Shown in pieces: positions 7,562 through 28,954 of a stretch of DNA of 35,418 nucleotides. A program made the position numbers and the translations under genes. Origin of the DNA: Fonticula alba ATCC 38817. Its lineage: Eukaryota; Protista; Nucleariida. Location of the stretch: assembly GCA_000388065.2 (NCBI GenBank), contig KB932202.1, one strand, 5' to 3'. The notes beneath the pieces are model-generated. The model worked only from the letters and a program-made list of their open reading frames with translations. It was not told the origin of the DNA and made no database searches. Each line of letters starts with the position of its first letter. The first letter of the stretch is position 1.

Positions 7562-8141
7562 GGTTAGGTGGATGGCGTGTGGTCGCGAGCGCAGNNNNNN
7601 NNNNNNNNNNNNNNNNNNNNNNNNNNNNNNNNNNNNNNNNNNNNNNNNNNNNNNNNNNNNNNNNNNNNNNNNNNNNNNNNNNNNNNNNNNNNNNNNNNNN
7701 NNNNNNNNNNNNNNNNNNNNNNNNNNNNNNNNNNNNNNNNNNNNNNNNNNNNNNNNNNNNNNNNNNNNNNNNNNNNNNNNNNNNNNNNNNNNNNAGAGAG
7801 AGAGAGAGAGAGGGCTGGGAGGAGGGAGGTGAGGGATCTGGGAGAGGGGGTGGAGAATGAAGATAGGCTGCACAGGGTGGTGAGGTGCTCTCTCCCGTCG
7901 GGAGACGCCGGGTGTGTCGGCCCGGCCGCCGATGAATGCAGGCTAGCAGCCACTCGGGAGTGGCCGCGGCACGAGCCCCGAAGGCTCGGCCCTGCCAGGG
8001 CGGCGTTGGGGGATGTAGTGGCGATGAAGGCGCACAGCCGGACCCAGCATTCCCCTGAGCATTCTCCTCTGCTTGGCAGGCGGCGGAGGCACGTTCCAAT
8101 CAGTTCCCGCCGTGCTGGCCGTGTCCCTGAGGGAGGGGCGG

Positions 8142-8175
<34 letters not shown>

Positions 8176-11100
8176 GAGTGTGTGTGTGTGTGTGTCCTCA
8201 TGCGTGTGCTATACGCGTATGCCATGCAAGGAGGGAGATACCGAGCCCGACGGGCTTACGAAGGGGGCAAATGGGCGGCTTGTGGGCGCGATCGCGAGAT
8301 CCGGGGACCGGATCTCGGTTGGACCTGGCCGAGATCGCGAGATCGAGCCGCGGACGCCGATCACCCCAGGGCAGGGGGGCGGGAGGGGGCCGGACAAGGG
8401 GCGGCGGCCCGCGCACTTATCCCCCGGGGGCGGCGATCTCGGCTCGCAAGCGGCGACCTCCATGGGGCAAGGCACAAATTCCCGGAGGACGGGGGCGGGG
8501 GGGGNNNNNNNNNNNNNNNNNNNNNNNNNNNNNNNNNNNNNNNNNNNNNNNNNNNNNNNNNNNNNNNNNNNNNNNNNNNNNNNNNNNNNNNNNNNNNNNN
8601 NNNNNNNNNNNNNNNNNNNNNNNNNNNNNNNNNNNNNNNNNNNNNNNNNNNNNNNNNNNNNNNNNNNNNNNNNNNNNNNNNNNNNNNNNNNNNNNNNNNN
8701 NNNNNNNNNNNNNNNNNNNNNNNNNNNNNNNNNNNNNNNNNNNNNNNNNNNNNNNNNNNNNNNNNNNNNNNNNNNNNNNNNNNNNNNNNNNNNNNNNNNN
8801 NNNNNNNNNNNNNNNNNNNNNNNNNNNNNNNNNNNNNNNNNNNNNNNNNNNNNNNNNNNNNNNNNNNNNNNNNNNNNNNNNNNNNNNNNNNNNNNNNNNN
8901 NNNNNNNNNNNNNNNNNNNNNNNNNNNNNNNNNNNNNNNNNNNNNNNNNNNNNNNNNNNNNNNNNNNNNNNNNNNNNNNNNNNNNNNNNNNNNNNNNNNN
9001 NNNNNNNNNNNNNNNNNNNNNNNNNNNNNNNNNNNNNNNNNNNNNNNNNNNNNNNNNNNNNNNNNNNNNNNNNNNNNNNNNNNNNNNNNNNNNNNNNNNN
9101 NNNNNNNNNNNNNNNNNNNNNNNNNNNNNNNNNNNNNNNNNNNNNNNNNNNNNNNNNNNNNNNNNNNNNNNNNNNNNNNNNNNNNNNNNNNNNNNNNNNN
9201 NNNNNNNNNNNNNNNNNNNNNNNNNNNNNNNNNNNNNNNNNNNNNNNNNNNNNNNNNNNNNNNNNNNNNNNNNNNNNNNNNNNNNNNNNNNNNNGGCGTG
9301 GCAGCGCGGGAATCAACCATGGCCGGAAGTGTCACCTCCCGGCACCAGGAAGAAAGAGGCCGAGATCGGGGGCGGGGCGGGGGCCTGGTGATCGGAGCTG
9401 TGCCGTGGGGGGGGGGGGGGGGGGGTGAGCCGGCCACCAGCCAGCTGGCTGACGGACGATGATACGCGTTACCCCGACCGGCAAGATGACATGCGCGGCC
9501 ATGAATTAAGCACTCCACCGGCAGGGCATTCCCCCGTCCCCGCCCCCGCGCCCCCCCTGGATGGGTGACGGAGCAACAATCGGGCAGGCCGGTGGGCAGC
9601 AGAGCAGCCGCGGGAGCGAGCAAGATGCGGCATGGGATACGAGGGGCATTGCCAGGCAGCCCGGCATTCGGTCTGCCTGCCCTGACCGGCCAGACGGACG
9701 ACGTCATGAGGAGGGGGCACCCGGGGCGCGGCGGGCCCCGTTTCCGGGGGCCTATCTCGCTGTTCCCGGGGCCCACGCCCCTCGGCGCAAAAGACGACCC
9801 AGTCATCTCGCGGCCGAGCACCTGACCGCACCTTCTTACGAAGCCCCAGCCCCCGGCCGTGGGGCGAGGGGGGGGGGGGGAGGGGGAGTGTGCTCTTCGG
9901 CTGGACCCTCTCTCTGGCTTGGCTGCTCGACCGTACCTCCCCCTCGGTGACCGGCCGTGCTTTACTTCACGTGCGGGGCCAAAAGGGCCAAATGTCGGCC
10001 CCGGTGGCTGTATTCACCTCTGGAGGCTCACCCGAGCCGGGAGTTCGAGCCGGCCAGAAGAGGGGCCAAGGGGGCGCGAGCAGGCAGTGCAAGGGAACAT
10101 CTGCATACTTGGCGGGGTCTTGTCGCGACGGAAGCCAAAGAAGGGCCTGCGCACCTGGCCTGCCCGACTGCAGCCTGGCCCGAAGTCAGCCTCAGTGCGA
10201 TGCCCAGCCGGGGCGATCGTGACCACAGGAGACGCCGTGCCTCCCCCCCGCCCCCGCCCCNNNNNNNNNNNNNNNNNNNNNNNNNNNNNNNNNNNNNNNN
10301 NNNNNNNNNNNNNNNNNNNNNNNNNNNNNNNNNNNNNNNNNNNNNNNNNNNNNNNNNNNNNNNNNNNNNNNNNNNNNNNNNNNNNNNNNNNNNNNNNNNN
10401 NNNNNNNNNNNNNNNNNNNNNNNNNNNNNNNNNNNNNNNNNNNNNNNNNNNNNNNNNNNNNNNNNNNNNNNNNNNNNNNNNNNNNNNNNNNNNNNNNNNN
10501 NNNNNNNNNNNNNNNNNNNNNNNNNNNNNNNNNNNNNNNNNNNNNNNNNNNNNNNNNNNNNNNNNNNNNNNNNNNNNNNNNNNNNNNNNNNNNNNNNNNN
10601 NNNNNNNNNNNNNNNNNNNNNNNNNNNNNNNNNNNNNNNNNNNNNNNNNNNNNNNNNNNNNNNNNNNNGCCGGGGCGATCGTGACCACAGGAGACGCCGT
10701 GCCTCCCCCCCCCCCCCGCCCCCCCCCCCCCCCCCCTCCCACACACATACATAGACTTCTCTGTTGCCAGCGATGTCCCCGGGCAAAAAAAAAAGCAGTC
10801 ATCTTCCACGCAATTGCACACAGAGTTCACAGAAAGTGCCGCACAAGACCTGACGGCACACGTCCTGATGGTCTGCCTGTGCACATGAAGCAGCTTGGAT
10901 GAGTAGGAGCGCCGTGCGTTGGATGGGGGAGAGGGAGGGGGAGGGGGGGTGGAGAGAGAAAGACGTCGATACACTCAAAACCGCATCCAAGGGGCCATTA
11001 TTCCGGTCAGGCTCTCGTCTCTCGCCCTCCCTCCTCGTCGGCCTGGGGGGAAGAGTGGCTCCTCGGGAACGCTGTAGGCCCCCCTTTTTGGGCTCTCGTA

Positions 11101-21745: not shown

Positions 21746-24432
21746 ATGATCCTCCCACGGGGGATTGTCGCCCTCGGAAGAGGTGCCCTCGGCGGCTCCC
21801 GCGACCGGCCGGTCGCACGTGCCGCCCTGGCCGCACAGGTGGTGGCCACCCGTGCAGCCTCGACTACCGCACACCCGGGCCCCGGGCCGGCCGGGCCCGC
21901 TTCAGTCATCGGGGCTTTCCCCCGGGGTGGTGCCGACACCCTGTCCGAGGGCCAACTCCGCTTTCTCCGTACCCCGGACACGAGCAGTCCAGTGGCCCCG
22001 GTGAAGATCGGCTCCTTTGTCCGCCTCGCACGGCGGATCCTCTCGCAACAGGCCCGCGCCGCGCGGCTCGACGGGCAGGGGCATCCGGCAGAGGCGGCGG
22101 CTGCGCGCCAGGCCGCCGAGCACCTGCGCCAGACTCTCATCACCTGCCCCGAGGCCGGCCCCGCCCTGCGAGAGCTCCAGCGCTCGACGTCTCCCTACTT
22201 CCGGGATGTCGGGCCGCTGGCCGAGCTGCGGCCCTGGTCCGTGAACCGGGTCAACCAGCTGGCCGAGGCGCGGCACCTGGCCGGCACACATTATGGCCTG
22301 GCGGTGGCGGCTCTGTGCAGCTCGCTTGTGTCCAGTCCCGAGTGCATCCTCCGGGAGCTGGGCCTGCCAACCATCCCCCCGGATGCCATCCTCCCGGAAC
22401 ACTTGGATCTGGAGGACCCGGCCGCCGGCCTGGTCCTGTCCAGCCTGTCGCCCATGCCCCCTGCGGCCGTGGCCCACATGCATCACATCGTGGAAAGTAC
22501 GCGCTGTCGGCTTGGAAGCATTCCCCCCCCCCCTTCCCTCCCCCCCCATCTGCCCTCCTCTTCCACATGGCCCGGGTCCCACCATGCCTCTAACCGCCGG
22601 GTGCTGCCGCTACTGTGGCGATGGACACGATTGCCATGTAGATTTCCCCCAAATGATTGATGAGGCATGTAGGCTGCCCTTTGTCGTGGACCGCACGCAC
22701 CAAACTTTCATGGTGGTCGACGACATCACGACCGTGGACCATGATGATGCCATTTCTGTCGAGTGCGTGCCCGGTCCAAGGCAACATGGCTCTTGCCTTT
22801 TGCCGGCGCGCTGGCCAGCGCCCCGACAAACAGTCCGATGCTTGCGCCTGACAAATGTCCCCCCCCCCCCCCCCCCCCCCCCTCGACCATGGCATGCAGA
22901 TACGATGCCGCCAGTGGCCACACGACGATTTTCGCACACATCGCCAGTCCGAGCCTCTTTATTCCCTTCGACTCGCCGCTGGAGCAGCATCTCCGCGCGC
23001 GGGGATCATCCATCTACCTCTCCAAGTCACGGGTGCCCATGCTGCCGCCGGAACTTACGCGCCTGCTCTCGGTCCTGCCCATCCCCGGGCTCGCCGAGGA
23101 TCGTGCCCTTGCCCTGACCATGGCAGCTACCATCGACCAGGAGGGGGCCATCCTGGACACCGGACTCTCGGTGTCGGTGCTGCGCCGCTCCCAGGGCCGG
23201 CGGCTGACCTACAATGCGCTGGATGCGCTGCTGGCCCGTGAGAGTGGTGTTCAGGACTCGGGCCCCGAGCCGGCCCTGCTCCCCGAGGAGGAGACCCTGC
23301 TTCAGGACCTGGGCTCGGACGCCACGCGGGTAGCCCTCCTCCAGGATGCATCCCGGCTGCTGGCAGCCACGCGCACCTTCCGCGCGCACCGACAGCAGGC
23401 CACGCCGACTGTTTCCATGGGCCGGGTGTCTTTGCGCCGCGGGGAGGCCGAGCTTCGGGTGAACGGGGTGTTGGCCCGGCAGGAGGCGCTGATCCCGACG
23501 CGCGATGGGACAACCACCTCGCCGGCCGACGAGCTGGTCAGTGAGTCGATGATCCTCGGCAACTTCGTGGCCGCTACCTGGGCCCGGGGCCAGGGGATTC
23601 CCTTTGTCTTCCAGAGCCAACGGTCGCAGCCTGGGCTCCTGCCGGCGGCTTTGCGCGAGCAGGTTGCTCGGTCCTCTGCCGCCGGGCCCTTGGACCTCAC
23701 TTTTTCCGAGCGCCAGTACGTGCAAGAGCTTCTCCCGCTCCTCCTCCTCCTCCTCCTCCTCCTCCTCCTCCTCCTCCTCCTTTCCGTGGCCCCGTGGCCC
23801 TCCTTCTTCTCGGGCTGAGCTTCCCTACAAGCATCCTCCTCTCCCCTGTACTGACGATGTGTCTCCCCTTGCATGTGCGCATGAAGGCTATTCTTCCAGG
23901 CCCAAGACGCCGGCACCTATGGCTTGACCCCGATGCGCCACTCGCTTCTCGGTTTGAAGACCTATGCCCAGGTGACCTCCCCCCTTCGGCGGTATATGGA
24001 TGCCCTGTGTCACTACCAGGTATGGCCCCTTTTCTCTCTCCCTTTCTCTTTCTTCTCTCTCTCTCTCTCTCTCTCTCTGGCTTCTCTTTGGCCTCTCTGC
24101 CGCTGGTGGAGAGCATGGGAGGGAGACGCCGATGCATGCGCTCCGTGCTTTGGCCCTGCCTAACAACGAACCTCCCCTCTTTGGCGGAATGACAGATTCT
24201 CAGCCATCTCGCCGGGCGCTCGCCCCTCTCGGAGGATGAGCTTCAGCCCCTTATGGCTCATGGCTCTCTGAAACAACGTGCGGCTCGCACTGCCAGTACC
24301 ACCTCTGAGCGATACTACACCGCCAAGTTTTTCGGTACGCTCCCTCTCGTATCACACGGCCGCCTACATCTCCACACACGTATACACACACGTATACACA
24401 CACGTATACACACACGTATACACACACGTATA

Positions 24433-25448: not shown

Positions 25449-25859
25449 CCCCCCCCCCCCATCCCCTCTACCCATTCCAATAAAGCTCCTTTTGAACTGC
25501 CCATTCTGCTTGGGGTGGGGAACAATTTCCGACATCGGTGCTTTTGTGCGTGTCCCCCACCCCGCGGTCATCAGAGGGGAAGCGCCGCAGAGAGCTTGTG
25601 CGCGCGCGCGCGCGCTTGCGCGTACACACGCGCGCTCGCGCGCACCAGGCTGGCACCATCATCCGGTGAACCCGTTGCACGTCTGAAAAGCCATCACTAT
25701 CTGGCAAATACAGTCAGAGGACCGACCCGGAGCTGCCGACTGCATGCTATCGATGAGTCCCAGGCTGCTGTGACGCTCGTCACACCCCTGGCCCTGTGGC
25801 ATCAGACGTTGGGCCCGAGAGGAGGGGGGGAGAGCGAGGGAACCGCCGGGATTCCCCCC
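25449..25859 (+). repeat. 411-bp direct repeat, copy 1 (identical to 28462-28872)
   Basis: Matches copy 2 base for base at offset 3013. Bounded by poly-C at both ends and contains AATAAA near its 5' end. Confidence 0.9.
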
Positions 25860-26285
25860 TCCCCCCCCCCCCGCTCCAGGTGCAACAGGAGAATGAGTAT
25901 GTCCTGCGAACATGGCAGGCACACATATATCCTACACAGAGAGTGGCTCCCTGCACAGACACGCGAGCACAGGGGCACAGGCGCATACACTTCCACATAC
26001 ACATCTCTGCCTTTGCAGCCACACCTGCCGAACGGCCGCAGGCGAAATGCAGCAAGTGGACGGCCTGAGGAGATGAGACTCCTGGATGTCTCCTGCGGAT
26101 TGGTCTCTGACACGGAAGCACAGCGGTGTGCCCAGGAAGGCTCGATCCATGGCTCTAGGCCAATATGCAAGGGCATGCCTTTGTGAGATCGCAGGGAAGA
26201 GGGGGAGGCCGGGAGATTGGGACCGAGAGAGAGAGAGAGAGAGGGGGGGGGGGGAGGGGGGGAGTCCGGACTTTGCCTAGAGAAT

Positions 26286-26495
26286 TCAGGATATCCTGAC
26301 GATGCCGGCCTGCCATACCAGGGTCCAGCCCAATGGTGATCGTACAGCACGCTACCCCCATAGGGGGCGGATATGTCCTGATCTCTCGCCTCCTCCTTCT
26401 TTCCCCCCCCCCCCCCCCCCCCCCCTCCGTACCCTCCTCCGTCCGGGCATTGGACACGGCGGGAGCTCGGAACCCCCCGCGCCGGGCTATAAAAG
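26286..26495 (+). promoter_or_regulatory. Promoter of the His-rich secreted protein gene: 14-bp palindrome, CCAAT, GC box, TATA box
   Basis: TCAGGATATCCTGA at 26286-26299, CCAAT at 26330-26334, GGGGCGG at 26364-26370 and TATAAAAG at 26488-26495, in canonical order about 260 nt upstream of the ATG at 26752. Confidence 0.6.
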
Positions 26496-26751
26496 AGGCC
26501 CCGCCTCGCACCTCCAACGGTTTGAGATCCAGACAAGCAATCCGCCTCCCGCCCCTCAGCCCAGCCAGTCTGAACTGAGAAAAACCGCCCCCTCGCGCTC
26601 CTCTTTCCCTCGCCTCTTTGCCTTTCCTCAAATCCGAGAAAATCCCCAGTCGCATCGTCGGTCGCTCCTCGCCGCACACCCTTCCTAGTTTAGGTCCTTT
26701 AGATTAGGCCTCATAGCTCCTAGAACTTCAGCCTTAGACCTCCCGTAGACC

Positions 26752-28158
26752 ATGTCGTACCTTCTTCGTGCCACCATCCTGGCCCTGCTGGCCGTGGTCC
26801 TGCTCCAGGCGGAGGCCACCATCGCTGGGGACCCCAAGGGCACTGCCTCTCCGCCGAATAAGAAGCCGGGCCATGGCCACCACCACGGCCACCACCACGG
26901 CCATCACCACGGCCACCACCACGGCCACCACCACGGCCACCACCATGTCCACCACGGCCACCACGGCCACCCCGAGCACCATCACGGCCACCCCGAGCAC
27001 CACCACGGCCACCCCGAGCACCACCACGGCCACCCCGAGCACAAGAATGGCCGCCAGCCCCGCCACGACTACACCTCCATCCACGCGGCCGGTGCCAAGA
27101 CCAAGACCAAGACCAAGACCAAGACCAAGAACCGCACTGGGCAGTTCCTGCTGAAGCACATCCACCCGGTTGGCTCGAAGCCCTCCGGGCCGAAGCCCCC
27201 GCAGCATCGCGAGTGCGAGTGCCCCGCTGACACCGCGCTCTACTGCTTCGAGGATGCCAAGACCTGCCAGAAGATCAAGTTCCCCCCGGGCCCGGGGCAG
27301 TTCCACTCGGCCACCAGCGTGTCCAAGTGCCTGGCCAACGGCTGGGCGGTGTACGCTTGCTCCAGCGAGCCGAATGTCTGCCGCAACGCCAAGACCTGCA
27401 AGGTCATCGGCGAGGGCACCGGGTCCCAGGACCCCCACTTCAAGGGCTTCAACGGCGCGGACTACTATGTGGAGGGCCTGCCCGGGCGCACGTACAACAT
27501 CCTCACCGACACCGACCTGCAAGTGAACGCCCAGTTCACCCGGCTCACCGGCCTGGCCGGCACCTACATGGGCCGTGTGGGCATTCTCCTTGGTGCCCAT
27601 GCCATCGGCTTCGACCCGGCCTTCGGGGCCTTCCTCAACGGCACCCACATGGCGGACGGCCTTTCGCTCGAGCTGCCCGAGGGCGATGTCGTGTACGAGG
27701 TGGTGGACGCCCGCCCGCGGCTGACCGTCCGCAGCGATGCCTACCAGCTGGTGGCCCGCGCGGTGGTTGAGCGCAACCTCCTGGAGGAGGCCTACGTCAA
27801 CCTCCATGCCAGCCTCATCGGGACTCCCCACCGGCCGCATGGCATCCTCGGCCAGACTGCCCAGTTCCTGGTGGCCCCGCCAACCGCCGGTGCTCAGGAC
27901 ACTCGCCGCAAGCCCAAGCGCCCGCACATCAACGGCCCCGCCTCCGAGGACACTGGCCGCGCCGCCGGCAATGACGGCGCTGCCTTCCACATCGAGGGTA
28001 CCGATGCCGACTACGAGGTGAAGGATGGCCTCTTCGGGTATGACTTCGTCTTCAACAGCTACAACCTGGACCAGGCCCGTGCCTTGCCTCAGGATGGCGG
28101 GTCCCAGCGCCGCGCCAACGCCCGGTCTCTCTTCGAGGCCTCGGTCGACATGAACTAG
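26752..28158 (+). CDS. Secreted 468-aa protein: signal peptide, His-rich repeats, (KT)5, 8-Cys domain, C-terminal DPH-initiated VWD/ITIH-C/root-cap-like domain; intronless
   Basis: Clean ORF with very strong C/G-ending codon bias and ACCATG start. Signal peptide MSYLLRATILALLAVVLLQAEA. C-terminal domain motifs DPHFKGFNG..YYVEG.PG..YNILTD..LQVNAQF, TYMGRVGI, PHGILGQT, IEGTDADYEV..GLF..DF.F. Confidence 0.92.
   Translation: MSYLLRATILALLAVVLLQAEATIAGDPKGTASPPNKKPGHGHHHGHHHGHHHGHHHGHHHGHHHVHHGHHGHPEHHHGHPEHHHGHPEHHHGHPEHKNGRQPRHDYTSIHAAGAKTKTKTKTKTKNRTGQFLLKHIHPVGSKPSGPKPPQHRECECPADTALYCFEDAKTCQKIKFPPGPGQFHSATSVSKCLANGWAVYACSSEPNVCRNAKTCKVIGEGTGSQDPHFKGFNGADYYVEGLPGRTYNILTDTDLQVNAQFTRLTGLAGTYMGRVGILLGAHAIGFDPAFGAFLNGTHMADGLSLELPEGDVVYEVVDARPRLTVRSDAYQLVARAVVERNLLEEAYVNLHASLIGTPHRPHGILGQTAQFLVAPPTAGAQDTRRKPKRPHINGPASEDTGRAAGNDGAAFHIEGTDADYEVKDGLFGYDFVFNSYNLDQARALPQDGGSQRRANARSLFEASVDMN
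26869..27042 (+). repeat. Coding tandem repeats: 6 x 12-nt GHHH units, then ~4 x 21-nt GHPEHHH units
   Basis: GGCCACCACCAC x6 (26875-26946) and GGCCACCCCGAGCACCAYCAC units from 26965. 37 His in 58 residues. Confidence 0.95.
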
Positions 28159-28461
28159 CGCGGCCGCTGGCCCTGGTGCGGCAGGCATATCGGAGAGTGT
28201 GGCGCCTGTGGGCGTGTGCCGCTGGAGCTTTCGTCCGCCCCGCCCCCCTCCTGCACCTCCTCCGTGCGCGTCTTTCCCGAATCCGGCGATGGTCGCCGGG
28301 GGTAGCCCATGCGGATCGAGCAATCTCCGCCATCGCTACCTCCCCCTCCACTTCCTGTGGGCCACAGAGCCCCTGGCGATGTTCATATTCCCGCCGGCTG
28401 CCGGCCGTGGCCCAGCATTCACCCCAGCCCAACACCCCCCCCCCCCCCCCCNNNNNNNNNN

Positions 28462-28872
28462 CCCCCCCCCCCCATCCCCTCTACCCATTCCAATAAAGCT
28501 CCTTTTGAACTGCCCATTCTGCTTGGGGTGGGGAACAATTTCCGACATCGGTGCTTTTGTGCGTGTCCCCCACCCCGCGGTCATCAGAGGGGAAGCGCCG
28601 CAGAGAGCTTGTGCGCGCGCGCGCGCGCTTGCGCGTACACACGCGCGCTCGCGCGCACCAGGCTGGCACCATCATCCGGTGAACCCGTTGCACGTCTGAA
28701 AAGCCATCACTATCTGGCAAATACAGTCAGAGGACCGACCCGGAGCTGCCGACTGCATGCTATCGATGAGTCCCAGGCTGCTGTGACGCTCGTCACACCC
28801 CTGGCCCTGTGGCATCAGACGTTGGGCCCGAGAGGAGGGGGGGAGAGCGAGGGAACCGCCGGGATTCCCCCC
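28462..28872 (+). repeat. 411-bp direct repeat, copy 2 (possibly an assembly duplicate)
   Basis: Identical to 25449-25859. Starts immediately after a 10-N gap and is followed by C-degraded sequence. Confidence 0.85.
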
Positions 28873-28954
28873 CCCCCCCCCCCCCCCCCCCCGTGGGCCC
28901 CCGGCGCCCCTGGGTGTTTTCAATCCCCCCCCCCCCCCCCCCCGGGCCCCCCCA

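What the first reader, a model, noticed from the sequence alone, without database searches (positions are those of the whole stretch)
26752..28158. Secreted His-rich protein with a probable self-cleaving Asp-Pro domain: candidate self-crosslinking, metal-hardened extracellular matrix component
Seen: signal peptide (aa 1-22), 37 His in 58 aa, (KT)5 followed by an NRT sequon, an 8-Cys module, then D227-P228-H-F opening a ~240-aa domain with HGILGQ and EG..ADYEV..LF motifs. Established: GDPH/DPH motifs at the start of VWD-type domains autocleave in mucins, RGMs and inter-alpha-inhibitor heavy chains, and in ITIH the freed Asp is esterified to a glycosaminoglycan. His-rich proteins harden invertebrate biomaterials through Zn/Cu binding or pH-triggered condensation. 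Inference: cleavage could attach the His/Lys/Thr-rich half to wall or stalk polysaccharide, giving an undescribed matrix-assembly system. This would be especially notable if the host is a fruiting-body-forming amoeba.
Basis: partly seen in the sequence, partly recalled or inferred. Interest (0 to 1): 0.8.

Follow-up and report, generated by a model that had tools for sequence, protein, structure and literature searches.

The report
Secreted His-rich protein with self-cleaving-type domain
This is a real, expressed gene of the slime mould Fonticula alba for a secreted protein: a histidine-rich, pH-switchable front half is joined to a C-terminal domain of the von Willebrand D / plant root-cap type, whose Asp-Pro bond sits exactly where related animal proteins cut themselves, but neither the cut nor any matrix role has been tested.

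Summary
The ORF is 26752-28158(+), 468 aa, with a signal peptide, 37 His in 58 aa, (KT)5, an NRT sequon, 8 Cys at 155-216, and D227-P228-H-F opening the C-terminal domain.

The organism is Fonticula alba, a fruiting-body-forming amoeba. Pfam does not recognise the query. A full-database search found 432 relatives, and 139 of the best 150 carry DPH at the same place.

An alignment-based AlphaFold model (pLDDT 82) matches VWD domains only (Z 10-16, then a drop to 4). Model P228 lands on the first residue of the post-cleavage chains of FCGBP D10 (P4081) and RGMB (P169). The best Swiss-Prot match is the ITIH1 C-terminal region.

Structurally the nearest family is the plant root-cap "DPH domain". 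That domain is nearly always C-terminal, follows variable extracellular cargo, and usually has no Cys after DPH, as here.

So the fold and the motif are supported. Autocleavage is a reasonable inference at about 0.55. ITIH-like covalent attachment and metal hardening remain speculation.

The protein belongs to a Fonticula-specific expansion, and its sister paralogue shares the His-rich and K/T-repeat cargo. First readers of this scan had already noted two other VWD/root-cap-like genes elsewhere in this genome.

The parts
26752..28158 (+). Complete single-exon CDS, 468 aa plus stop
   Evidence: Transcript contigs are colinear on 26983-28189 without joints. The ESM Atlas holds the same protein letter for letter.
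26752..26817 (+). Signal peptide, aa 1-22 (R6, hydrophobic core 7-20, AEA|T)
   Evidence: Hydropathy maximum at aa 4-20. The cleavage site is inferred from the -3/-1 rule. No dedicated predictor was available.
26866..27045 (+). His-rich tract, aa 39-98: (GHHH)n followed by (HGHPEHH)4
   Evidence: 37 His in aa 41-98. Tandem DNA repeats of period 12 and 21. Computed charge is +25 at pH 5.5 and -2 at pH 7.5.
27097..27138 (+). (KT)5-K repeat, aa 116-126, and the N127-R-T sequon
   Evidence: 6-nt repeat, 6 copies, 100% matches. The sister paralogue P0001 has a KSKTKSKTKTKT tract.
27214..27399 (+). 8-Cys module, aa 155-216 (C-x-C-x7-C-x6-C-x20-C-x9-C-x6-C-x5-C)
   Evidence: It occurs once or twice in relatives of the Fonticula clade. 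AF2 pLDDT is 70-90. No relatives were found outside that clade.
27430..27438 (+). D227-P228-H229, candidate autocleavage site between strands beta1 and beta2
   Evidence: D is kept in 58/59, P in 58/59 and H in 56/59 sequences of alignment A1. DPH is at this place in 139/150 hits. Model residue 79 (P228) aligns to the first residue of the cleaved chains 8qci_B (4081) and RGMB (169).
27412..27876 (+). VWD-type beta-sandwich, about aa 221-375, including HGILGQ at 363-368 (nt 27838-27855)
   Evidence: AF2 pLDDT is mostly above 90. VIA Z is 15.8 to VWF and 15.4 to MUC2 and MUC5AC. Foldseek probability is 1.00. The profile of A1 hits FCGBP at 3.4e-23. H363 is kept in 57/59; G364, G367 and Q368 in 59/59.
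27877..27978 (+). Low-confidence basic/Pro-rich insert, about aa 376-409
   Evidence: pLDDT is about 50 for model residues 231-260. Homologues are poorly conserved here.
27979..28071 (+). Root-cap-like C-terminal element, aa 410-440 (EG..DYEV.DGLF..F.FN.Y)
   Evidence: pLDDT is 86-97 for model residues 261-290. G416 and Y421 are invariant, and D420, F432 and N435 are kept in at least 93%. In homologue P0066 this region gives a sub-threshold Pfam Root_cap hit. Plant root-cap models align across it.
28072..28155 (+). C-terminal tail, aa 441-468, ending R..SLFEASVDMN
   Evidence: A similar end (R..[LF]FEA.VD) is present in P0001, P0002, P0004 and P0151. pLDDT is low. Its role is unknown.
25449..25872 (.). 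Upstream copy of a 424-bp direct repeat that brackets the gene
   Evidence: 99.8% identical to 28462-28885.
28462..28885 (.). Downstream copy of the 424-bp repeat, directly after the assembly gap at 28452-28461

Best explanation
The gene encodes a secreted, modular extracellular protein of Fonticula alba. It belongs to the DPH / root-cap branch of the von Willebrand D (VWD) superfamily.

Shown: the C-terminal 240 aa form a VWD-type beta-sandwich plus a root-cap-like closing element. D227-P228-H229 occupies the beta1-beta2 turn, where GDPH-bearing VWD domains cleave themselves.

Inferred mechanism:
1. The signal peptide is removed and the 8-Cys module forms disulfides.
2. The folded domain strains the Asp227-Pro228 bond. 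The Asp side chain attacks its own peptide carbonyl, most readily in acidic late-secretory compartments. This gives an Asp-anhydride C-terminus on the front half and a new Pro228 N-terminus.
3. No Cys lies after residue 216, so no disulfide can tie the halves together. In this the protein differs from mucins, FCGBP and RGMs and resembles the ITIH heavy chain and its propeptide. The basic front half (22.5 kDa, pI 9.3) can therefore part from the acidic domain (26 kDa, pI 5.4).
4. The front half carries 41 His, computed as about +43 at pH 5.5 and +10 at pH 7.5. It would act outside the cell as a pH-switchable or metal-switchable polycation that sticks to anionic matrix or wall material.

Whether the anhydride is simply hydrolysed or is captured by a sugar hydroxyl or a Lys amine is open.
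For: Secretion signal and composition:
- Both are read directly from the sequence.

Expression:
- Two runs of only 11 million letters each give depth 4-6 contigs over the CDS and nothing on the flanks.

Family:
- 432 homologues were found. 36 of 59 aligned homologues hit Pfam VWD.
- The profile of A1 hits FCGBP at 3.4e-23 and MUC5AC at 9e-8, with DPHF in register with GDPHY.

Fold:
- The AF2 model has pLDDT 82 and pTM 0.77.
- VIA Z is 10-16 for VWF, MUC2, MUC5AC, FCGBP and RGMB, and the next unrelated fold scores Z 4.
- The ITIH1 C-terminal region is the top Swiss-Prot match at 23% identity.
- Root-cap proteins align across the whole domain.

Site equivalence:
- P228 aligns to the first residue of the post-cleavage chains of FCGBP D10 and RGMB.
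- D4080 is the cleaved Asp of FCGBP D10.

Selection on the motif:
- D, P and H are each kept in at least 95% of A1.
- D and H are the residues whose mutation abolishes cleavage in FCGBP.

No interfragment disulfide is possible:
- This protein has 0 Cys after D227, as do 84 of 139 homologues.

C-terminal module behind varied extracellular cargo:
- The domain ends within 32 aa of the C-terminus in 54 of 58 full-domain hits.
- Cargo includes RTX, cadherin-like, collagen, discoidin, LamG and CBM96 domains.

Cargo under selection:
- The sister paralogue H696_01757 keeps the His-rich and K/S/T-repeat tracts in a different order.
Against: - No experiment on this protein or on any DPH/root-cap protein shows cleavage.
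- The residue before Asp is Gln, not Gly. It is G in 112 and Q in 10 of 139 hits. In FCGBP the Gly-Asp bond is cis.
- Position +14 is Glu. Q4094E at that position in FCGBP gave only partial cleavage.
- The Ancylonema ice-binding protein with a DPH domain ran at about 55 kDa, the full-length size. The spot was not identified by mass spectrometry.
- Grass root-cap proteins have DPR, so the family tolerates loss of His.
- FCGBP cleaves but only hydrolyses, without cross-linking.
- After cleavage, strand beta1 could still hold the halves together non-covalently.
- Localisation and metal binding are untested.
Confidence: 0.55

Rival explanations
1. ITIH-like covalent transfer. The Asp227 anhydride is captured by a hydroxyl of a stalk, spore-wall or cyst polysaccharide, or by a Lys amine of the KT repeat of a neighbouring molecule. 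This would ester-link or isopeptide-link the His-rich half into the matrix, where His-metal or pH-driven condensation hardens it. The C-terminal domain would be a leaving propeptide.
For: - The top Swiss-Prot structural match is ITIH1 666-835 against model 72-221. If the start of that alignment has no gaps, D227 lands on ITIH1 Asp672. By my recollection of UniProt P19827, not checked here, that is the chondroitin-esterified residue.
- No interfragment disulfide is possible.
- The domain is terminal behind diverse extracellular cargo.
- The ITIH3 ester to GalNAc C6 and the anhydride chemistry are described in PMC8267560.
- F. alba builds a secreted extracellular-matrix stalk (PMC9097593).
Against: - Among GDPH proteins, transfer is documented only for ITIH heavy chains. 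FCGBP hydrolyses and does not cross-link.
- No acceptor is known in Fonticula.
- No localisation, proteomic or metal data exist.
- The available RNA comes from one sample with no stage information.
Confidence: 0.18
2. There is no functional cleavage. The DPH domain is a stable adhesion, oligomerisation or carbohydrate-binding module. The intact protein is a soluble or surface-bound His-rich metal binder, either a zincophore-like scavenger or a metal buffer.
For: - The G-to-Q and Q-to-E deviations around the motif.
- The 55-kDa, apparently full-length DPH-domain ice-binding protein.
- MUC2 D1, a VWD assembly, has been crystallised with Cu(II) (7prl).
- Dense GHHH and HGHPEHH repeats are typical of metal-binding tracts (my own knowledge).
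Against: - D-P-H is kept in at least 95% of homologues across very distant lineages. A purely structural turn would not easily explain this.
- The residues kept are the catalytic ones defined in FCGBP.
Confidence: 0.25
3. The released His/Lys-rich cationic half acts on prey bacteria, as a histatin-like antimicrobial or agglutinating agent, rather than on the amoeba's own matrix.
For: - F. alba feeds collectively on bacteria (PMC9097593).
- The fragment is strongly cationic at acidic pH.
Against: - This rests on composition alone.
- Cargo in homologues is adhesion or matrix-type, not antimicrobial.
- No supporting data were found.
Confidence: 0.07

Closest known systems
Plant and algal root-cap proteins, the "DPH domain" (Pfam PF06830 Root_cap covers only its last ~57 aa; Prochazkova et al. 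2024, PMC10796529; Raymond 2024, bioRxiv 10.1101/2024.01.29.577848)
   Same: - Signal peptide, then a variable N-terminal region, then a C-terminal domain of about 250-280 aa that starts with DPH.
- A beta-sandwich followed by an HG.LGQT ... EG...DY.V...F.F closing element.
- AFDB root-cap models align over model residues 61-310 at E about 1e-10 to 1e-11.
- The top feature and structure clusters in the ESM Atlas carry Root_cap.
   Different: - The query gives no Pfam Root_cap hit even at E<=10.
- Only 2 of 59 relatives hit it, and the one inspected (P0066, 21.5 bits) is below the gathering score of 27.
- Sequence identity to the plant models is 16-17%.
- The host is an opisthokont amoeba, not a streptophyte.
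- The His-rich/KT/8-Cys cargo is unique to Fonticula.
[quoted passage not shown]
   Same: - The best Swiss-Prot structural match (ITIH1, E 1.6e-7, 23% identity).
- DPHF at the start of a VWD-like sandwich that lies C-terminal to the functional part.
- The two halves are not disulfide-linked, so the C-terminal domain can leave.
   Different: - No VIT or VWA domains.
- The only ITI_HC_C Pfam signal is a non-significant hit in one relative (P0044, E 0.15).
- Transfer to a glycosaminoglycan is untested here, and bikunin-type acceptors are unknown in Fonticula.
GDPH-bearing VWD domains of FCGBP, MUC2/MUC5AC, RGMa/b/c, SUSD2, BMPER and MUC4
   Same: - Same fold (Z 10-16).
- Same position of the Asp-Pro bond: P228 aligns to FCGBP P4081 and RGMB P169.
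- The D and H required for cleavage are present.
   Different: - No cysteine in the domain, so no interfragment disulfide and no C8/TIL/E partners.
- Gln instead of Gly before Asp.
- An extra root-cap-type C-terminal element and a 35-aa insert.
His-rich extracellular proteins (vertebrate histidine-rich glycoprotein GHHPH repeats, Nereis jaw protein Nvjp-1, histatins); named from my own knowledge
   Same: Tandem Gly/His/Pro-rich repeats in a secreted protein. A charge switch near pH 6-7 is expected, and so is Zn/Cu/Ni binding.
   Different: The resemblance is in composition only and no homology was detected. Single-sequence PDB hits to the tract were His-tags of recombinant proteins.

Membership tests
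VWD superfamily (Pfam PF00094 / PROSITE VWFD) | Sequence model of the family matches | tested here: inconclusive
   The query itself gives no Pfam hit. However, 36 of 59 aligned homologues hit VWD at E<0.01, several above the 22.9-bit cut-off. The profile of A1 hits FCGBP at 3.4e-23. Four paralogues are named VWFD domain-containing in UniRef.
VWD superfamily (Pfam PF00094 / PROSITE VWFD) | VWD beta-sandwich fold | tested here: met
   The AF2 model has pLDDT 82. Foldseek probability is 1.00 with E down to 8e-7. VIA Z is 15.8 to 9.9 for 38 VWD entries, then drops to 4.0.
VWD superfamily (Pfam PF00094 / PROSITE VWFD) | Conserved intradomain cysteines, including the disulfide that ties beta1 to the rest | tested here: not met
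   There is no Cys after residue 216. The same holds in 84 of 139 homologues.
Autocleaving GDPH VWD domains | G-D-P-H in the beta1-beta2 turn, with D and H essential | tested here: met
   D227, P228 and H229 are present and in structural register with the FCGBP and RGMB cleavage sites. The preceding residue is Q rather than G. D and H are the essential residues.
Autocleaving GDPH VWD domains | Actual cleavage of the Asp-Pro bond | not testable with these tools
   This needs protein expression and MS or Edman sequencing. No proteomic data were available.
Root_cap / DPH-domain proteins (PF06830) | Pfam Root_cap model matches the C-terminal ~57 aa at the gathering score (27 bits) | tested here: not met
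   The whole protein gives no hit at E<=1. The domain alone (aa 223-468) and its C-terminal element alone give none at E<=10. Homologue P0066 scores 21.5 bits.
Root_cap / DPH-domain proteins (PF06830) | C-terminal domain of ~250-280 aa starting with DPH, made of a beta-sandwich plus a closing element, behind a signal peptide and a variable N-terminus (definition in PMC10796529) | tested here: met
   Root-cap AFDB models align to model residues 61-310. The domain is terminal in 54 of 58 relatives.
ITIH-type propeptide (PF06668 ITI_HC_C) | Sequence model matches | tested here: not met
   The query gives no hit. The only signal is a non-significant hit in one relative, P0044, at E 0.15. The relationship is structural only.
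ITIH-type propeptide (PF06668 ITI_HC_C) | Transfer of the new C-terminal Asp to a glycan (ester bond) | not testable with these tools
   No biochemical data. The chemistry is known for ITIH3 (PMC8267560).

The most novel reading that the evidence does not exclude
The Cys-free, C-terminal DPH/root-cap domain may be a widespread module that works like the ITIH propeptide. It occurs here in an opisthokont slime mould and in streptophytes, and probably in haptophytes, a ciliate and bacteria. On this reading it cuts itself at Asp-Pro and uses the resulting Asp anhydride to ester-link whatever cargo precedes it to extracellular polysaccharide.

In Fonticula this would graft a pH- and metal-switchable His-rich polycation into stalk, spore-wall or cyst matrix. 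It would also give the more than 2000 plant root-cap proteins of unknown function a mechanism.
Probability: 0.15. Interest if true: 0.8.

Novelty: new variant of a known kind. Interest (0 to 1): 0.5.

Why it matters
Fonticula alba builds its fruiting body by secreting a matrix stalk, and none of the papers found here describes what that matrix is made of. A small family of secreted proteins specific to this lineage is therefore a concrete, testable entry point into matrix assembly in an independent origin of aggregative multicellularity next to fungi.

The family's conserved Asp-Pro-His site sits exactly where animal VWD proteins cleave. The chemistry allows covalent grafting, as in ITIH.

More broadly, two things suggest a mechanism for a large plant and protist family whose function is unknown. 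The plant root-cap "DPH domain" is a VWD-type domain with a conserved cleavage motif, and most members cannot hold their halves together by a disulfide. In the searchable literature no paper links "root cap" with GDPH.

If the site does not cleave, this is simply one more divergent VWD protein with a low-complexity His tract.

Tried and rejected
- Pfam on the whole protein, on aa 223-468 and on the C-terminal element gave nothing, even at E<=10 for the two fragments.
- Single-sequence phmmer against PDB gave only artefacts: His-tags of recombinant spike proteins matching the His tract.
- AF2 without an alignment was useless (pLDDT 36.6). It was repeated with the 59-sequence alignment A1.
- The word-indexed homologue search found only 4-10 relatives. 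The exhaustive search was needed.
- The 8-Cys module has no relatives outside the Fonticula clade in the word-indexed sequence search. Atlas scores were at most 0.55, and the structural rows were unrelated bacterial folds. It stays unassigned.
- Runs X10 and X15, carrying another organism label, laid no reads and are no test. Stage-specific expression could not be examined.
- Pfam on ten large neighbouring ORFs gave only an RNB domain at 22763-23815, so the neighbourhood gives no functional context.
- The minus-strand ORF at 26734-28323 (529 aa) is treated as a GC-rich shadow frame, because all homology lies on the + frame.
- A pseudogene or an assembly artefact is rejected: the frame is intact, there is transcript support, and the motifs are conserved. 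The flanking repeat and the gap do leave copy number uncertain.
Full report
**Observation**

The window belongs to Fonticula alba.

The frame at 26752-28158(+) is an uninterrupted 468-codon ORF.
- A hydrophobic N-terminus, with its maximum at aa 4-20, followed by AEA|T.
- 37 His within aa 41-98, and 51 His in all.
- KTKTKTKTKT at 116-125, followed by K-N127-R-T.
- Eight Cys at 155-216 and none later.
- D227-P228-H-F.
- HGILGQ at 363-368 and EG..DYEV.DGLF at 415-428.

The His and KT tracts are coded by tandem DNA repeats of period 12/21 and 6. GC3 is 0.89.

Two small runs from 2012, which the tool marks as probably RNA, give contigs colinear with 26983-28189. There are no joints, and nothing lies on the flanks at 26300-26875 or 28244-28440. 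Each run holds only 11 million letters. By my recollection the genome is roughly three times that size. Depth 4-6 confined to the CDS therefore means transcript, not contaminating DNA. The gene is real, expressed and single-exon over at least the covered part.

**What the C-terminal half is**

Pfam does not recognise the query. An exhaustive phmmer of aa 155-468 against 1.84 billion representatives found 432 relatives at E<=1e-3.

A 59-sequence alignment (A1) gave this consensus: GDPHF.GFDG..YDF.G.PG ... PHG.LGQTA ... IEG...DY.V.DGLFG..F.FNRF. Column conservation was counted:
- D227 is kept in 58/59, P228 in 58/59 and H229 in 56/59.
- G364, G367, Q368, G416 and Y421 are invariant.

Thirty-six of the 59 members hit Pfam VWD and two hit Root_cap. 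One of these, P0066, hits Root_cap over the closing element at 21.5 bits, below the 27-bit cut-off. The profile of A1 hits FCGBP at 3.4e-23 and MUC5AC at 9e-8 in PDB, with DPHF in register with GDPHY.

AF2 with this alignment gave pLDDT 82 and pTM 0.77. Foldseek against PDB returned only VWD assemblies and RGMB at probability 1.00.

VIA-align gave Z 15.8 for VWF, 15.4 for MUC2 and MUC5AC, 13.2 for FCGBP D10 and 10-11.7 for RGMB. The next, unrelated fold scored Z 4.0.

The alignment ranges are the key result. Model residue 79, which is P228, pairs with residue 4081 of chain 8qci_B and with residue 169 of the RGMB C-terminal chains. Those chains begin at the proline created by autocleavage. D4080 is the cleaved Asp of FCGBP D10. 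The Asp227-Pro228 bond is therefore structurally the same bond that cleaves in those proteins.

Against Swiss-Prot models the best match is ITIH1 666-835 at 23% identity, and several other ITIH chains follow.

Against AFDB clusters, two further VWFD domain-containing proteins come first at 39-41% identity. I take them for Fonticula from their accession range, which I did not verify. Plant root-cap proteins and haptophyte and other protist proteins follow, aligned over model residues 61-310, which is the whole domain including the closing element.

**Relation to what is published**

- The plant "DPH domain" was defined in 2024 as a ~280-aa C-terminal domain that starts with DPH and consists of a beta-sandwich plus the Pfam root-cap piece (PMC10796529).
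- Neither text mentions VWD, GDPH or cleavage. No searchable paper combines "GDPH" with "root cap".
- The chemistry of GDPH is described in PMC10880436 and PMC8267560. Asp and His are required. The Gln 14 residues downstream matters partly. The product is a C-terminal Asp anhydride that water, hydroxyls or amines can open. In ITIH3 it ends as an ester on GalNAc of chondroitin sulfate.

**Family-wide anatomy**

These counts come from the 150 best hits.
- DPH is at the expected place in 139. The preceding residue is G in 112 and Q in 10, the Q cases including the Fonticula clade. Position +14 is Q in 62 and E in 4.
- In 54 of 58 hits with a complete domain, the domain ends within 32 residues of the C-terminus. 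This includes proteins of 2439, 3676 and 6967 aa.
- Eighty-four of 139 have no Cys after the Asp. In most members an interfragment disulfide, the feature that keeps FCGBP, mucin and RGM fragments together, is therefore impossible.
- The cargo in front is mostly unrecognisable. Where Pfam sees something it is extracellular: RTX repeats, bacterial Ig, cadherin-like, LamG, collagen, discoidin and CBM96 domains.
- AFDB adds subtilisin, DUF305 and a PPM phosphatase as named cargo. The published case carries a DUF3494 ice-binding domain.

**The Fonticula family**

- H696_01757, H696_05825, H696_05826 and H696_05827 are paralogues. The last three are consecutively numbered on one contig.
- A maximum-likelihood tree of the first 30 rows of A1 puts them in one clade with two environmental sequences (support 100/99). 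The window protein is sister to H696_01757 (93/84). Rows 31-59 of A1 were left out of the tree.
- That sister also has a K/S/T dipeptide repeat and a His-rich tract, but in the opposite order. The composition of the cargo has therefore been kept while its sequence was reshuffled.
- An unrelated metagenomic member, P0070, also has a His/Gly-rich front half before GDPHF.
- The 8-Cys module occurs once or twice in this clade and has no detectable relatives elsewhere.

**Mechanism proposed**

Shown:
- The secretory signal.
- The VWD/DPH fold.
- The catalytic D and H in the cleavage turn.
- The absence of any possible interfragment disulfide.

Inferred:
- Autocleavage at D227|P228, favoured by acidic secretory compartments. 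It would yield a 22.5-kDa basic front half (pI 9.3, computed charge +43 at pH 5.5 and +10 at pH 7.5) and a 26-kDa acidic domain (pI 5.4).
- The front half would then behave as a pH- or metal-switchable polycation in the extracellular space.

I put cleavage at about 0.55. Gln replaces Gly before the Asp, and Glu replaces the helper Gln; Q4094E in FCGBP cleaved only partly. A DPH-domain ice-binding protein appeared full-length on a gel, although it was not identified by MS. Grasses have DPR in place of DPH.

Covalent transfer to matrix polysaccharide, as in ITIH, fits the architecture well. It has precedent only in ITIH, whereas FCGBP merely hydrolyses. I give it about 0.15-0.2.

Metal hardening and stalk localisation have no evidence beyond composition and the biology of the organism, which secretes an extracellular-matrix stalk.

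**Verdict**

The protein is a new variant within a known kind: a Cys-free, C-terminal DPH/VWD domain with a novel His-rich/KT/8-Cys cargo.

First readers of this scan had flagged two other VWD/root-cap-like genes of the same genome, which fits the paralogue family found here.

Noticed in passing
window 25449-25872 and 28462-28885; gap at 28452-28461: A 424-bp direct repeat at 99.8% identity brackets the gene at a spacing of 3013 bp. The second copy starts right after a 10-N assembly gap. The 3-kb unit may be tandemly repeated and collapsed in the assembly, or the repeat may be a gap-closing artefact, so copy number is uncertain.
   Followed up: partly
window 27648: Both transcript assemblies read G where the genome has C. 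This changes codon 299 from CAC (His) to CAG (Gln), just after the N296-G-T sequon. It could be a strain difference or an assembly error; there is no DNA run to tell.
   Followed up: no
window 27613-27624 (aa 288-291, DPAF); P0001, P0002, P0007, P0151: Inside the sandwich the Fonticula-clade relatives carry a second FDPHFG motif. In the window protein it reads FDPAFG, with the His lost. This may be an echo of an internal repeat or a second labile Asp-Pro site in the paralogues.
   Followed up: no
window 28120-28155 (aa 457-468): The extreme C-terminus (R..SLFEASVDMN) is conserved in P0001, P0002, P0004 and P0151 but modelled with low confidence. It may be a sorting or interaction tail specific to the Fonticula clade.
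   Followed up: no
window 26896-26971: An abundant transcript contig of 3.2-3.4 kb (word depth 37-39) from the same RNA runs shares only 22-24-nt stretches of His-codon repeat with this gene. Another highly expressed gene in this organism therefore has similar His-coding repeats.
   Followed up: no
P0070 (metagenomic protein, 405 aa): This protein is an independent case of a His/Gly-rich N-terminal half placed directly before a GDPHF domain. It lies outside the Fonticula clade and has no obvious signal peptide.
   Followed up: partly
window 22763-23815 (+): An ORF here has an RNB (RNase II-type) domain at E 1.7e-27. The other nine large ORFs tested in the window had no Pfam match.
   Followed up: no
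window 7595-10668: This region has low GC (0.34-0.50) and is interrupted by long N runs at 7595-7794, 8505-9294 and 10261-10668. This part of the assembly is a draft, and the many overlapping ORFs listed there are not trustworthy.
   Followed up: no
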